The notes under the pieces were generated by a model that searched no databases, was not told the origin of the DNA, and saw only the letters and a program-made list of their open reading frames with translations. The position numbers were made by a program, and so were the translations under genes. Shown here one piece after another: positions 1 to 58,780 of a DNA stretch of 64,000 nt. The stretch is from Magallana gigas (Eukaryota): positions 36,704,001 through 36,768,000 of the forward strand of contig NC_088855.1 in the NCBI RefSeq assembly GCF_963853765.1, written 5' to 3'. Each line of letters starts with the position of its first letter. Within the stretch, counting starts at the first letter, position 1.

Positions 1-683
1 TTTCAAAATAAAAAAACAACATTTAATTCGTTCATTCTGTCTATATCGCTTGCCATTCAAGAGACAAATTTGAAATTAAAGCGGGGGCGAACGTCAGCTT
101 TTATCCTACGTGCGGAAAACTGACGTTCAGAACAAATGAGCGGTAATAAAAGATTTCCCTGTGGTTCTTTGTTGAGCATTAAGGTGCATTTTTAGGAGCC
201 GTTGCTTGCGTAATTGATTTTAGCAGTAATTCATGATGTCACCCACCCCACATTCCCACAGGCCACTGCGCTAATCCGTGCATTGGTGGCATTTTTATTT
301 CCACATAAACAATCTCATGTAAAAAAAACATTTAACACAAACGTTGCCTTCATTATGAACTTACAGGTATATTTGTTCCCAATTAGTTAACACATATGTG
401 ATTACAATATTTGCAAACAGATTTATGCATTCCAGATACACATTTCAGTGCATAATCTAAGAGCTGAAAAAACGATTGATTGACACCAATTAAGAGTTTC
501 TGATAAGAAATGGATGTTAAGTATTCATAACAGGTAAGTATTCATGATTTCCTACCAAGGACACCATTCCACTTAACATTAACAGTGGAATGTAAAGCTA
601 CCAAAACATTTGCTTTTAGGGTTTCTTAGCGGATCAAAAGTTATACCATCCCCAATTTTCTTAACAATTTTGATAAGTCTCAC

Positions 684-1415
684 CTGCATTCTAGCCGCTG
701 CCCCGCGGTTTCTGGGTTGTAGGGACCGGTGTTCCGTGCTCCTTGGGGCCCCGTCCTTCAGCAACAACCGGATCATGAAGAAATAAAGAACGGACGATAG
801 GACGAGGGGAACAACATAGAAAACAACAAAATCAAACACATAGTAAATCCCGTAGTAGTAGCGCTCCAAAGTATATGTACAGCTCTGAACCACGGTACCA
901 TTCCGGGTGTGGGGGACTACTTTGGCTAAAGCCAGCCACGGAGAGCAATATAAAATAGCCAGAGTCCACAACACAAAAAGTATCCTCCTTGCACGACTGA
1001 CCGTACAAATTGTTTGAGCTTTTAAGGAATGACATATTCCTATGTATCGTTCAACGGTAAAGGCACCTATTGAAAGGGAGGACACATTGGCGCCCAAATA
1101 TCCCAAGAAAACGCACAACGTGCACATAAAAGATCCGTAAGGCCAATCTTCCGCACGGAGAAGGGGCTCGGGAATTGTGGGAAGGTTTGAGGAGATGAGG
1201 AGGATGCAGTCAGCCACACAGAGGCTAAGAAGGTAACAGTTTGTGGGGGTCTGGAGACTTCTTCTCTTCAGTATCACAGTTATGACCAAAATATTACCAG
1301 CAAAGCCAATGATGAATATCACCAGGGGCAGCCCCACGGCCATGACCGTATATTCCAATGAGGGCCCCGCCCGAGTGTCCAAAGTGACATTTTCGGAGCT
1401 CTCGTCCATCCGCAT
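684..1415 (-). CDS. TRHR: Thyrotropin-releasing hormone receptor-like rhodopsin GPCR, first coding exon (TM1-TM5); remaining exons lie left of the window
   Basis: ORF shows GFAGNILV (TM1), TPTNCYLLSLCVAD (TM2), YLGANVSSLSIGAFTVERYIGICHSLKAQTICTVSRARRI (TM3/ICL2, closely resembling vertebrate TRHR) and TM5 VVFYVVPL. Donor CAG|GTGAGA at 684/683 in ICL3; the ORF-track tail 579-683 is intronic. Start at 1415 or 1409. Confidence 0.88.
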
Positions 1416-35934: not shown

Positions 35935-37602
35935 ATGATGTTCCTAGTGATCGCCGCCTCTCTCTTCGCTGTGTCCCAGGCCCAAGTGTTCGGAGGACTT
36001 GGTTGTCCCACCACCAACACTGTGGCCAACTTCAACCTGACCAGGGTAAGACTCTTATTTCGTGTCTTATAATTATTTTCTTATTGTTACAATTTTCTTC
36101 ATTTGAAACACAAACCATGATTTCAAGACAAGAGTTTTAGAAAGTTGCACGCTGTTTTTAATCAAAATGCGCTGCCGCTTGTTACATGTTCATTGTTTGT
36201 CTTTGTTTTTATAGTATCTTGGAACATGGTATGAAATTTACAAATTTAAAGCCAATTTCGAGAACAATCAGAAATGTATCCAGGCCAACTATCAACTGAA
36301 AGCCGACGGACACATCCGAGTAAACAACACCGGAATTTCTATAAGGTACGTCTAATAAATTATCTATGTAGGTCCCTGACCAGACTATTGACCTATATTA
36401 ATATATGCAGAACATGTATCCGACAGCTGGAATAACATTACATGAAACTATATGATATATTTCAAAATTGCCAACGTTGTCAAAATGAGTTCATCTTTTT
36501 CCTCTGTCTTGTGTATAGTGACGGAATGCCCAGTACGGCCATAGGAGACATCTACATTCCTGACGTCAACGACGGGTCCAAACTGAAGGTCAAATTCGCT
36601 TCCGGTAAGATTTTGCATGTACGCTAGAGATGTGCAAAATATAGCTACTGTCCTGAAGATAACTACAATTTGAAGTTTAAAACCAGTTTGAATATATTTT
36701 ACTTTCAAATTTATAAAAGAATTTTAGGGGGCGTTTGAATAGTGATTATTTAAGCTAAAAAATTTGATTGCAATGAAGAAAAGAGATTTTTAATTTTTCT
36801 GAATTTGCAGTGTAAAACAATCACGCTTCTTTTCGAAATCAAATATTAACATCTTCTTTTTAAAAATCTTTTAAAAAAATCGATTGTATTCATAGAGCGA
36901 CAGGCATTAAACGAATGATGAGATTCCATAACATATACATGTCTGCGACCCCTATTGACAAAATAAACTACAGAAAAATATACCATGATTTTGAGTAAAT
37001 AGAATTTGAATTTTCTCATTAATGTCAATAAGTTTGAATCTTTTTTGTTACTGGAAAATTGTCGATATATCTATGATTCTTTAGATTTGATAACAGCAAA
37101 TTGAAACTTGTGAAGTGAATAAATATGTATAGAATATAACTATGGACGAAACAGATGATATATGCATTTAACGAAATATAAAGACCAAACATGACCTCTC
37201 TACACTTGTACATAGGGCAAACCCCTAATTTATATATCCCTATGTGTATCACCAAGGAGAGCATTTTATTGTTTAGTTGCTCTATTGGTATATGCTATTT
37301 TCTAGAAGAGATATAGTTTTAAACTATCAAACAACTTGTTTTGTTAGATGTCATCAGTCAGGATTTTGTATTTTGCAGCTGCACCTTATGGAAACTACTG
37401 GGTTTTAGACACAGATTATGAACACTACACACTCATCTATTCCTGTACCAGCATTCTTGGAATCAGCCATTTTGAATTTGGGTGGATATTGGCGCGAACA
37501 AGAACCATTCCCGATGCAACGACCCAAAAACTGTTCGGTATCATGGAAAATTTCCATATCAACAGCCACCATTTTATGAAGACTGACCAAACCGGCTGTT
37601 AA
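35935..37602 (+). CDS. APOD: Apolipoprotein D-like lipocalin, 4 exons, 183 aa
   Basis: Exons 35935-36045, 36215-36345, 36519-36604, 37379-37602 (552 nt, in frame). Signal peptide MMFLVIAASLFAVSQA; lipocalin SCR1 YLGTWYEI, SCR2 YWVLDTDYEHY, SCR3 WILAR; N-glycosylation sequon NLT; terminal Cys. Confidence 0.92.
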
Positions 37603-39365
37603 ATCCATTCCTTTGTTATGTCGTATTATCATCATCTTTGTGTACATGCTTTGACTGTTACTGCTATTTCTGTTGAGTGCTTTATGGTTATACTTGTTAT
37701 TTTATATAAAATTATGAAAATAAGATAAAAGGTTTGTTGACTTTGTTCTTCTTGGGCCAAAAAATTGGGTTAGATCTAATTTGCACGGTACTTTTTAGAT
37801 GTTACATATATATTAATTTATTTAAGAAGCTGGAACGAGAAGGCGATTAAGAAATTAAATGAAGTCTATTATTGCAACAAAGTGCGAAGTAAAAGTAAGT
37901 GTAAGAAAACAAGAAAAAGTTGTAAAACTGATCAATCTTTAAGAAAACAAAAACAACTTAATTAGGACTCACGACCAAAGTAACTGAATCAGATGTTCAG
38001 TTTTACGTAGTAAAATATTCAATGTATCAGCTCGATGCCGTTTAAACATAAATGACCAACTTGTATACAAATCTTGTGTGTTAGGATAATTTCGTACTTT
38101 TTTGGGGGGGGGGGGGGGGTGGGGGTGGTTAAACGCAGCACCACTAGGCTACCACACACTAGAACAACAATTTAGTCCAATTTTTGAACAATGCAGTACA
38201 GATAGGCAAACTTTTTCCTTTTTAGTGTCTGATATAAACCAAATGCAAAACGGTTCAGTTTCAGTAACAAGAATTAATGCAGTCTTGGAAATCGGCGTGG
38301 CACTTGTCATAGCAGTGTTTCTGGTTGATGATTTCTAAGGTGCCATGACACCCGCCGACACGCAGTACAGTTAAGGCGGTCAATAAAAATACGGGCAAAT
38401 TTTTGTGATGAAAACACGTATACTTTAGTTAAACTGGCATGTCCTTTTTAAAATCAATAACAGTCACTCAAATGCAATATATTTCTAAAATATATATATA
38501 ACAGTACAATATTTTATGTTCATAGTGGTCACGTGATATGGCAGTCGCATGGTACAAGCAGATGTATTTGTGGTTTTGAGGTCATTTAAAAAATTCAATA
38601 TTGCAAGGGCATAATCATGCCAAAATTCACAACTGAATTATGAAATAACTTGATGTTATATCGTAGATTTTGAAAAACGGTGCGAACTTTTTAAGATAAG
38701 AATATTTGTTAGTAGAAACCGTAATTTATAATGCATATGTTGAATAATTTTGAAGGTCACGGGGTTAATTTCATTAAAAAATAATTAATTTGTAAGATTT
38801 TACAAGGATCGTAGAAGTTTTTAAGTTACATAGCATATTTCAAATTCACATGTAAAAGTTTGTCGGGATCAGGTAAGTGTATGCCCTTGCAATTAAGTGA
38901 TTTATTTAGGTACTCAGATTTTAGATATACGATATTTTATACAAAACCGAGGTGGCTTCTTTATACGATGCATACTTTTAACAAAATGAAAATAAGACTA
39001 TATAGGTAGCATTCTACTAATAATAATTTTAAACAAAATATTCATTTATACTTTTCCGTTAATGTATGACATTTATTTTTCTTCACTATAAAACTGCACG
39101 ATAGCCTTCAATGATTTAACTTAATGCGTCATTTTGAAGCATATGACGTCATATTTTGTAGTACAGCGAGAAAGACATCTCGCTTATTTTTCAGTGTGTA
39201 CGATATAACGGACATCAAAATTGTAAGTAATAGCAATTGTTGTTTTTAATTAAAAGATTAGTATAAGTTAATTTTACTAATAAATAGATTAATAAGTACT
39301 TTCGAGGTTTGTAATATACTGTGATGTCATAATGCACATTTCCCGTACTTTTTGTCTGAACGGAG

Positions 39366-39371
39366 TTTATT
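39366..39371 (-). terminator. Poly(A) signal just after the stop of the Cys-rich peptide gene
   Basis: TAA-ggctgtc-AATAAA on the - strand. Confidence 0.5.
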
Positions 39372-39378
39372 GACAGCC

Positions 39379-39942
39379 TTAACTGTGCTGCGCACACATG
39401 TTGTGACACGTGGCCCTGCATCCAATGGAGATGTCCTCACACTCACAGTTACACGACTTCCCCTCATTCCAGACGCTACAAGCCATGGCTACACTGGTCA
39501 CTAGGGCTGTTATCACGATAACTACTAGGGCTAACCTGTGAAAGATTAAACGCACGTTATTGAAAATGAGGACAGTCATTATGCAGTAATGATAAAAAAT
39601 AAAATCATTATAGCTGTTGGGTTCTCTTATTTATAATAATATTGGTTTAGGTCGAGTATCTATGAATACATATTGTACGCTTTTCCTTAAATTGCTTAGA
39701 AGTTTAATCGAATACATGTATTCCCATATATGTTGTCAATTTATCGTTTCAAAACGCCTTTCTTTGCATTTGAAGCAATGAAATAAACAAGCTTAGTTTT
39801 CTTTTAAAAAAATTAATACATGTTAAATAAAACGAAAAATTATGAAAACTTAAAATATGTAAATTGTTAATTGTAAATTTGGATGCTATAAATCAAATGA
39901 ATTATTGAAACAATAGAATAACCTGATGACTCCTTTCCCCAT
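39379..39942 (-). CDS. Small secreted cysteine-rich peptide, 58 aa (MGKGVIRLALVVIVITALVTSVAMA-CSVWNEGKSCNCECEDISIGCRATCHNMCAQHS)
   Basis: Exon 39379-39535 has acceptor TTTCACAG|, a hydrophobic signal core, 7 Cys and a nearby AATAAA. Proposed first coding exon 39923-39942 (ATG...AG|GTTATT, phase 2) is less certain; the same CAG|GTTATT donor is used by ADCK5 exon 4. Confidence 0.7.

Positions 39943-53516: not shown

Positions 53517-58780
<5,264 letters not shown>

What the first reader, a model, noticed from the sequence alone, without database searches (positions are those of the whole stretch)
39379..39942. Small secreted 7-cysteine peptide with a truncated ShKT-like scaffold
After a 25-aa signal ending A-M-A, the 33-aa mature part is C-x8-C-x-C-x-C-x6-C-x3-C-x3-C. 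CSVWNEGKSC resembles the ShKT C-x2-W-x3-G-x-C segment and CRATCHNMC resembles the ShKT C-x2-T-C-x2-C end. The first ShKT Cys is missing and two extra Cys (NCEC) are present. The odd Cys count suggests dimerisation or metal binding. It also inverts the CxxxC/CxC order of CS-alpha-beta defensins. It matches no bivalve defence-peptide pattern I know and is small enough to escape annotation. Possible toxin-like, antimicrobial or signalling peptide (inference).
Basis: partly seen in the sequence, partly recalled or inferred. Interest (0 to 1): 0.7.

Follow-up and report, generated by a model that had tools for sequence, protein, structure and literature searches.

The report
Transposon-truncated oyster 12-cysteine peptide gene
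The "7-cysteine peptide" is the front half of an oyster gene for a secreted 12-cysteine peptide, cut short in this genome copy by a 1-kb transposon; the gene belongs to an unnamed peptide family shared by oysters and scallops and is not ShK-like.

Summary
They lie in the terminal inverted repeat of a 1032-bp transposon (38361-39392) inserted in the coding exon. Eleven unconverted and three bisulfite-converted contigs from other oyster samples lack the insertion. Ten unconverted ones read on to a 61-residue, 12-cysteine peptide; the eleventh has a frameshift. The missing half is intact in the window at 38359-38261.

Real homologues exist in other oyster-like samples and in the scallop Mizuhopecten yessoensis, where one is annotated "hypothetical protein". 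They share the cysteine frame and evolve under purifying selection (dN/dS about 0.2). No Pfam family (including ShK), no solved structure and no paper matches. AlphaFold predicts two long antiparallel helices. The cysteine spacing fits a four-rung disulfide ladder plus two further bridges (inferred).

Relatives start at an ATG just after a conserved splice acceptor, and in this oyster that ATG is gone, so the start codon is unknown. No transcripts could be checked. Function is unknown; a secreted defence or binding peptide is my best guess. The family is moderately interesting; this allele is most likely a null.

The parts
39923..39942 (-).
   Evidence: One of 101 phase-compatible ATG...GT candidates in the 3.4 kb upstream. 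It ranks 15th on a rough donor score, log-odds about -0.4. The TATA-like motif 16-24 nt upstream is too close to place this ATG inside a transcript (read; inference).
39577..39579 (-). Alternative in-frame ATG (leader MTVLIFNNVRLIFHR-), present in all alleles seen. It would be intronic if the conserved acceptor is used.
39591..39657 (-). 67-bp segment present in the window but absent from the other haplotype contigs (indel just upstream of the coding exon)
39536..39555 (-). Pyrimidine tract plus CAG 3' splice acceptor, conserved in position across the family. In relatives the ATG follows within 0-7 nt; here it is replaced by AGG/TTA.
   Evidence: L020, L021, L006 and both L005 genes compared with the window and L010
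39481..39535 (-). Hydrophobic signal-peptide segment (R)LALVVIVITALVTSVAMA, with predicted cleavage after A-M-A
   Evidence: It aligns with the signal peptides of the relatives. The -3/-1 rule was applied by eye; no SignalP was available.
39394..39480 (-). N-terminal half of the mature peptide, Cys1-Cys7 (29 aa)
   Evidence: HMM of relatives, positions 1-31, E=2e-12. phmmer against 1.8 billion proteins finds P0130 at 4e-6 and P0131 at 8e-6.
39379..39393 (-). Transposon-derived tail AQHS plus TAA stop. The AATAAA at 39366-39371 also lies in the inverted repeat.
38361..39392 (.). 1032-bp non-autonomous, MITE-like insertion (GC 29%) with 27-nt terminal inverted repeats at 39366-39392 and 38361-38387 (25 of 27 complementary). 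The flanking duplication is 'TG' or none. Superfamily not determined.
   Evidence: I1; 2 matches, 0 expected. It is absent from L001-L004 and L010-L019. No other copy is in the window or in the fetched loci.
38261..38359 (-). C-terminal half of the mature peptide, Cys8-Cys12 (32 aa, VGGCHG...INSCY) plus TGA stop; still an open frame
   Evidence: HMM of relatives, positions 28-60, E=6e-7. 96% identical to the uninterrupted alleles. Translation.

Best explanation
The finding is the 5' part of a single-coding-exon gene for a secreted 12-cysteine peptide of about 61 residues, in an oyster (Magallana/Crassostrea gigas or a very close relative).

What happened in this window (shown): a 1032-bp transposon with terminal inverted repeats sits inside the coding exon just after Cys7. 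The frame therefore runs four codons into the transposon's terminal repeat and stops. That produces the 33-residue, 7-Cys 'peptide'. The remaining 32 codons (Cys8-Cys12 and the stop) lie intact 1 kb downstream.

The family (shown): the gene belongs to an unnamed, taxonomically restricted family found in oyster-like samples and in a scallop. Its cysteine frame is C-8-C-1-C-1-C-6-C-3-C-3-C-3/4-C-10/11-C-3-C-6-C-3-C.

How it most likely works (inferred):
- The signal peptide is cut just before the conserved 'CS.W'.
- The mature peptide folds into two antiparallel helices.
- Both cysteine sets Cys2/4/5/6 and Cys9/10/11/12 are spaced 4-7-4. This fits a four-rung disulfide ladder: C2-C12, C4-C11, C5-C10, C6-C9.
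- C7-C8 close the loop between the helices. Both scallop genes lack exactly these two cysteines.
- C1-C3 tie down the N-terminal arm.
- The result would be a very stable extracellular peptide that acts by binding a target. My best guess is host defence (microbe, protease or channel binding), but no activity is shown.

The allele in this window would lose five of the six inferred bridges, so it is most likely a null allele. Whether and from which start codon the intact allele is translated in this species is unresolved, because the ancestral ATG is missing in every allele seen.
For: Insertion:
- 27-nt inverted terminal repeats exactly bound the segment that other samples lack.
- Eleven unconverted contigs (L004, L010-L019) and three bisulfite-converted contigs (L001-L003) jump from 39394 to 38364.

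Intact alleles:
- P0129 and 14 listed members of its 61-member cluster all read the 12-Cys peptide.

Both halves are in the window:
- An HMM built without this locus gives E=2e-12 (positions 1-31) and E=6e-7 (positions 28-60). The next hit is 0.34.

Family:
- P0130, P0131, P0132, P0135, P0150, P0151 and scallop P0134 (OWF50617.1) share 12 invariant columns, 9 of them Cys.
- A second, unannotated scallop paralogue lies 3.7 kb from the first.

Constraint:
- dN/dS is 0.20 for the scallop pair and 0.25 for L006/L021.
- Among 15 distinct protein variants of this locus, amino-acid diversity is 0.0066 in the mature region and 0.033 in the pseudo-translated 3' flank.

Fold:
- AlphaFold2 on P0130 gives pLDDT 78.8 with helices 28-48 and 55-77.
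- AlphaFold2 on the oyster allele gives helices 43-62 and 69-92 at pLDDT about 80. The non-coding read-through scores below 50, which serves as an internal control.

Gene structure:
- The scallop CDS is a single exon.
- An acceptor lies directly before the ATG in five relatives.
Against: - No transcript or peptide evidence was available for any family member.
- In this oyster the ancestral ATG is absent from all alleles, and the gene is not annotated in the databases searched.
- One allele (L004) has a single-base frameshift. Some relatives have lost one or two ladder cysteines (P0132, P0135). Members of the family therefore decay easily.
- The disulfide map is inferred from spacing and from one co-loss. 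I could not inspect model coordinates.
- The alignments behind the structure models are shallow (8 and 11 rows).
- Net charge ranges from -4 to +4.6, so the peptides are not uniformly cationic as classic antimicrobial peptides are.
- Foldseek found no significant structural match.
Confidence: 0.85

Rival explanations
1. The whole locus is a pseudogene, or is becoming one, in this oyster species. The start codon was lost, the exon is no longer translated as a secreted precursor, and the transposon and frameshift alleles are neutral decay.
For: - The ancestral ATG directly after the conserved acceptor is replaced in the window and in all 15 alleles seen.
- No annotated protein or gene call other than raw ORFs exists for this locus.
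- There is an insertion allele (this window) and a frameshift allele (L004).
Against: - All 12 Cys and the open frame are kept in every uninterrupted allele listed.
- Amino-acid diversity is five times lower in the mature region than in the adjoining pseudo-translated flank, and the changes are singletons only.
- The coding block is 99.5% identical between haplotypes whose 3' flank is only 82-90% identical.
- An in-frame ATG 15 codons upstream (39579) is present in all alleles.
- The cluster sample is biased towards intact frames, so this evidence is moderate.
Confidence: 0.25
2. One reading: a complete two-exon gene encoding an intact 33-residue, 7-Cys, ShKT-like mini-peptide that works as such, with the odd Cys used for dimerisation or metal binding.
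For: The ORF exists as written, has GT..AG ends, and an AATAAA follows the stop.
Against: - The stop, the last four residues and the AATAAA are transposon repeat sequence that 14 other contigs lack.
- Relatives all continue to 10-12 Cys.
- No ShK match at any threshold tried.
- The predicted fold is helical.
- Five of the seven cysteines lose their inferred partners.
- The 66-aa ORF with the transposon tail is on record in no other assembly.
Confidence: 0.03
3. The exon is an internal or terminal exon of a larger multi-exon protein. The conserved acceptor would join it to upstream coding exons, and the hydrophobic stretch would not be a signal peptide.
For: - A well-formed, conserved 3' splice acceptor directly precedes the exon.
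- This species has no ATG after it.
- An EF-hand gene lies upstream on the same strand.
Against: - In five relatives the ATG follows the acceptor within 0-7 nt and begins a typical 18-19-residue signal peptide.
- The annotated scallop gene is a 231-nt single-exon CDS.
- All relatives stop 1-2 residues after Cys12, except one with a Pro/Thr-rich tail.
- The EF-hand exons are more than 16 kb away.
Confidence: 0.07
4. A chance cysteine-rich ORF in T-rich non-coding DNA.
For: Stretches with 7-8 Cys per 40 aa occur six times in this window.
Against: - Significant homologues with the same cysteine frame in oysters and a scallop.
- dN/dS about 0.2.
Confidence: 0.01

Closest known systems
Disulfide-laddered helical-hairpin peptides (CS-alpha/alpha fold): Cerebratulus neurotoxin B-IV (PDB 1VIB), scorpion kappa-KTx/Om-toxins, plant alpha-hairpinins and vicilin-buried peptides
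   Same: - Small secreted peptide predicted as helix-loop-helix.
- Paired CXXXC motifs on facing helices. Known members have ladder-like I-IV/II-III bridges and 0, 2 or 4 disulfides (bioRxiv 10.1101/2020.05.26.118075).
- B-IV is 55 residues with four disulfides and a helical hairpin (PMC6410017). It is the top Foldseek hit.
   Different: - The Foldseek hit is not significant (E=4.1, TM 0.42/0.57).
- A family profile finds no PDB chain by sequence.
- This family has 12 Cys (six bridges inferred) and an extra N-terminal C-x8-C-x-C-x-C arm.
- The likeness is of fold type only, probably convergent. No activity is known.
   Same: Small, cysteine-rich and secreted; a short C-x2-W-x3-G-x-C-like string.
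   Different: - No PF01549 match for the window peptide or for any of 8 relatives.
- 12 conserved Cys rather than 6.
- Predicted as two long helices.
MEROPS family I84 mollusc serine-protease inhibitors (cvSI-1 and others)
   Same: Mollusc-restricted, signal peptide, mature peptide of about 7-8 kDa with 12 conserved Cys, tandem duplication, role in defence (PMC9198434).
   Different: - I84 genes have three exons with six Cys each in exons 2 and 3, and their motifs are unrelated (for example C-T-C cores; PMC9198434).
- Here all 12 Cys are in one exon and the frame is different.
- I could not fetch I84 sequences, so no direct alignment was made.
Mytimycins (mussel antifungal peptides)
   Same: Bivalve; signal peptide plus a mature peptide of about 54 aa with 12 Cys; a non-coding first exon (PMC8004829).
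   Different: - Mytimycin cysteine arrays begin CC-C-C..., carry a C-terminal EF-hand extension and are restricted to Mytilida (PMC8004829).
- This family begins C-x8-C-x-C-x-C, has no extension, and is found in oysters and scallops.

Membership tests
ShKT (PF01549) | Match to the Pfam ShK profile | tested here: not met
   No hit at E<=10 for the window peptide or its pieces. No hit at E<=1 for any of 8 family members.
ShKT (PF01549) | Six conserved Cys in the ShKT frame, forming three disulfides | tested here: not met
   The family frame has 12 Cys (10 in scallop). The first ShKT Cys is absent and extra Cys are present.
CS-alpha-beta defensins | A helix carrying CXXXC, pinned to a beta-strand carrying CXC | tested here: not met
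   AlphaFold2 models contain helices only and no strands. The models have moderate confidence.
Disulfide-laddered helical hairpins (CS-alpha/alpha; B-IV, kappa-KTx, alpha-hairpinins) | Helix-loop-helix fold | tested here: met
   Two antiparallel-length helices are predicted in two independent targets. This is prediction only.
Disulfide-laddered helical hairpins (CS-alpha/alpha; B-IV, kappa-KTx, alpha-hairpinins) | Paired CXXXC motifs bridged in a ladder | tested here: inconclusive
   The spacing 4-7-4 on both helices fits a ladder, and the scallop genes have lost C7 and C8 together. The connectivity was not observed.
Disulfide-laddered helical hairpins (CS-alpha/alpha; B-IV, kappa-KTx, alpha-hairpinins) | Homology (sequence or significant structural match) to a known member | tested here: not met
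   The PDB profile search found nothing relevant. Foldseek 1VIB scored E=4.1.
MEROPS I84 inhibitors | Three-exon gene with six Cys in exon 2 and six in exon 3 | tested here: not met
   All Cys are in one exon, compared with PMC9198434.
MEROPS I84 inhibitors | Sequence similarity to cvSI/scSI members | not tested
   No tool could fetch I84 sequences. The published motifs (PMC9198434) show no resemblance by eye.
Mytimycins | Cysteine array starting CC-, C-terminal EF-hand extension, Mytilida only | tested here: not met
   The frame is, relatives stop right after Cys12, and the hosts are oyster and scallop, compared with PMC8004829.
New pteriomorph 12-Cys family (this report) | Signal peptide; 'CS.W' start; frame C-8-C-1-C-1-C-6-C-3-C-(3-C-3/4-C-10/11 or 15)-C-3-C-6-C-3-C; invariant C.C.CED | tested here: met
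   The two window pieces match an HMM of the relatives at E=2e-12 and 6e-7.

The most novel reading that the evidence does not exclude
The family is a previously unrecognised class of bivalve effector peptides: six-disulfide helical hairpins, more heavily cross-linked than any described member of that fold. It would have been kept since oysters and scallops diverged. In oysters it would be carried as a presence/null polymorphism (transposon, frameshift and cysteine-loss alleles) of the kind seen for fast-evolving immune or toxin-like genes.
Probability: 0.25. Interest if true: 0.6.

Novelty: new variant of a known kind. Interest (0 to 1): 0.4.

Why it matters
For genome scanning, the result is a caution. 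An odd cysteine count and a neat stop plus poly-A signal can be made by a transposon's terminal repeat. Bisulfite-converted assemblies can also pass for 77%-identical "homologues".

For bivalve biology, it exposes a small secreted-peptide family that has no name, no Pfam model and almost no annotation, although it is conserved under purifying selection between oysters and scallops. The predicted scaffold is unusual: a helical hairpin with a four-rung disulfide ladder plus two further bridges. Very stable scaffolds of this kind are of interest as defence molecules and as peptide frameworks. The null alleles at this locus add to the picture of presence/absence variation in bivalve effector genes.

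None of this is established functionally.

Tried and rejected
- **Word-indexed protein searches.** The 58-aa model and the uninterrupted 55-aa piece found only the same locus. The apparent 77% "homologue" P0001 is bisulfite-converted DNA. P0002 is a frameshifted allele.
- **Family and structure libraries.** Pfam, PDB sequence and PDB profile searches gave nothing. The weak Connexin, DUF249, tick anticoagulant and TSP-repeat lines are noise.
- **Foldseek.** Nothing significant against PDB or BFVD.
- **Literature.** Searches by run accession and by peptide strings returned no papers.
- **Exact look-ups.** The window ORF with the transposon tail and a junction-spanning ORF are not on record. Look-ups of P0009 and P0150 also found nothing.
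- **Paralogues and further transposon copies.** None in the window or the fetched loci.
- **Diversity among L010-L019.** Uninformative, because those contigs were selected for an identical protein.
- **Bacterial promoter/terminator scan.** Irrelevant here.
- **I84 and mytimycin membership.** Considered because both have 12 Cys; rejected on gene structure and cysteine array.
- **Not attempted.** The two window halves were never joined. The uninterrupted sequence was always taken from natural alleles (L004, the P0129 cluster).

Full report
**1. The observation**

On the minus strand, 39942..39923 joined to 39535..39379 translates to 58 residues. The window is 33% GC and has no N.

Cysteine richness alone means little here. 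Six stop-free stretches of the window reach 7-8 Cys per 40 aa.

**2. The end of the ORF is a transposon**

The first protein search returned only two clusters from raw-read assemblies.
- The contigs of the first cluster (L001-L003) differ from the window almost only by C>T changes (139-168 of about 200 differences). They are bisulfite-converted DNA of the same locus, not homologues.
- L004 is ordinary DNA, 99% identical.

All four leave the window at 39394 and resume at 38364. Ten more contigs from other samples (L010-L019) do the same.

The skipped segment, 38361..39392 (1032 bp, 29% GC), is bounded by 27-nt terminal inverted repeats with 25 of 27 positions complementary. There are two matches in the window against none expected. 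The flanking duplication is 'TG' or none, and I did not assign a superfamily.

No second copy of the element is in the window or in the fetched loci.

**3. The uninterrupted gene**

In the empty-site alleles the frame continues to ...CHNMC-IGGCHGTLEIINQKHCYDKCHADFQDCFNSCY-stop. That is a 61-residue mature peptide with 12 Cys. The window keeps this second half as an open frame at 38359..38261.

Every analysis of the whole peptide used natural uninterrupted alleles.

**4. It is a real gene family**

A full HMMER scan of 1.8 billion representatives with the 48 genuine residues of the exon gave:
- the uninterrupted allele (P0129, 98% identity);
- true relatives P0130, P0131, P0132, P0135 and P0134 at E=4e-6 to 9e-4;
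- one spurious repeat protein, P0133.

P0134 is OWF50617.1, "hypothetical protein KP79_PYT22775" of the scallop Mizuhopecten yessoensis. Its CDS is a single 231-nt exon. An unannotated paralogue lies 3.7 kb upstream of it.

The alignment has 12 invariant columns, nine of them Cys, plus S, W and the ED of C.C.CED. The cysteine frame is C-8-C-1-C-1-C-6-C-3-C-3-C-3/4-C-10/11-C-3-C-6-C-3-C. Both scallop genes lack Cys7 and Cys8.

An HMM built without this locus hits the two window pieces at E=2e-12 (positions 1-31) and E=6e-7 (positions 28-60). The next best hit is 0.34.

Evidence of constraint:
- Where synonymous sites are not saturated, dN/dS is 0.20-0.30.
- Among 15 distinct protein variants of this locus, amino-acid diversity is 0.0066 in the mature region. 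It is 0.033 in the adjoining pseudo-translated 3' flank and 0.036 in the leader.
- This sample is biased towards intact frames, so I treat it as moderate evidence.

The host is an oyster. A neighbouring GPCR exon is 95% identical to Magallana gigas TRH receptor and 82% identical to the Ostrea and Saccostrea proteins.

**5. The gene start is unresolved**

In five relatives a pyrimidine tract and a (C/T)AG acceptor lie 0-7 nt before the ATG that opens an 18-19-residue signal peptide. This implies a non-coding first exon and one coding exon.

The window and all alleles of this species keep the acceptor (CTTTCACAG|G), but the ATG position reads AGG/TTA. Three possibilities remain:
- An ATG supplied by an upstream exon. 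Its donor, CAG|GTTATT, scores at background on a rough textbook matrix.
- The in-frame ATG at 39579, which would be intronic if the acceptor is used.
- No translation at all, meaning a pseudogene.

No transcript data could be queried. A 67-bp indel (39591-39657) separates the window from the other haplotypes just upstream.

**6. Fold and likely mechanism**

AlphaFold2 with the family alignment predicts the following for P0130 (mean pLDDT 78.8):
- a signal helix;
- a short N-terminal arm;
- two long helices, residues 28-48 and 55-77.

For the oyster allele the same two helices (43-62 and 69-92) have pLDDT of about 80. The read-through of non-coding sequence scores below 50, a useful internal control.

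Cys2/4/5/6 and Cys9/10/11/12 are both spaced 4-7-4, so each set lies on one helix face. From this I infer:
- a four-rung antiparallel ladder: C2-C12, C4-C11, C5-C10, C6-C9;
- C7-C8 closing the loop, supported by their joint loss in both scallop genes;
- C1-C3 fixing the N-terminal arm.

This connectivity is an inference, not an observation.

The peptide would be a very stable secreted binder. Net charge ranges from -4 (this locus) to +4.6, so a classic cationic membrane-active mechanism is not general for the family. My best guess is a defence or binding effector, held with low confidence.

The allele in the window would keep only one of the six inferred bridges. It is most likely a null.

**7. 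Comparison with known families**

- **ShKT.** No Pfam match for the peptide, its pieces or any relative. The cysteine number is wrong and the predicted fold is wrong.
- **CS-alpha-beta defensins.** No strands are predicted.
- **MEROPS I84 inhibitors and mytimycins.** Both are bivalve 12-Cys peptides, but they differ in exon structure, cysteine array, extensions and taxonomic range (PMC9198434, PMC8004829).
- **Disulfide-laddered helical hairpins.** This is the nearest structural class. Examples are Cerebratulus neurotoxin B-IV, scorpion kappa-KTx and plant alpha-hairpinins or vicilin-buried peptides. These are described with 0, 2 or 4 ladder disulfides (bioRxiv 10.1101/2020.05.26.118075; PMC6410017). 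B-IV (1VIB) is the top Foldseek hit but is not significant (E=4.1), and there is no sequence match. The relationship is therefore "works like / folds like", not membership.

**8. Verdict**

That was a good catch. However, the features that made it look special come from a transposon insertion: seven cysteines, a truncated ShKT-like frame and a tidy 3' end. Exon 1 is unsupported.

The family itself is a modestly novel variant of a known kind. The allele in this window is an ordinary insertion-disrupted copy.

Slips: none that I am aware of.

Noticed in passing
window 579..1415 (-): First coding exon of a rhodopsin-type GPCR. It is 95% identical to Magallana gigas thyrotropin-releasing-hormone receptor isoform X6, which identifies the host as an oyster.
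   Followed up: partly
window 56060..56419 and 57830..58207 (-): Two exons with EF-hand motifs (Pfam EF-hand_1/5/6/7), probably a penta-EF-hand-type calcium-binding gene. It lies upstream of the peptide gene on the same strand.
   Followed up: partly
L005:6263-6490 (+): Unannotated second copy of the family in the scallop scaffold, 3.7 kb upstream of OWF50617.1. It has 10 Cys and a CAG acceptor directly before its ATG.
   Followed up: yes
L001-L003 (whole contigs): Logan contigs from bisulfite-converted DNA. Their predicted proteins (P0001 cluster) look like 77%-identical homologues but are the same locus with C>T conversion.
   Followed up: yes
P0129 cluster (61 members); L010-L019, gene call at 72-554: The gene caller read the TGA stop as Trp. 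This gave 160-aa 'proteins' that run 66 codons into the 3' flank. These artefactual tails served as a neutral control.
   Followed up: yes
L004 (SRR6063090): An otherwise uninterrupted allele carries a single-base deletion that shifts the frame within the mature-peptide region. It could be a real null allele or an assembly error.
   Followed up: partly
window 39591..39657: A 67-bp segment just upstream of the coding exon is present in the window but absent from the 11 other unconverted haplotype contigs. It contains a TATAAATA motif.
   Followed up: partly
window 37289..38093 compared with L010-L019: The 3' flank is only 82-90% identical between haplotypes, whereas the coding block is 99.5% identical. 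Either haplotype divergence is very high or the flank is repeat-derived.
   Followed up: no
L020:1121-1351 (+): One oyster-type relative (P0131) carries a Pro/Thr-rich tail after Cys12. This could be a mucin-like O-glycosylated extension.
   Followed up: no
P0132, P0135 (ENA metagenome-assembly contigs, e.g. L021): Relatives that have lost one or two of the ladder cysteines, while cluster-mates P0150 and P0151 keep all 12. These may be decaying copies.
   Followed up: no
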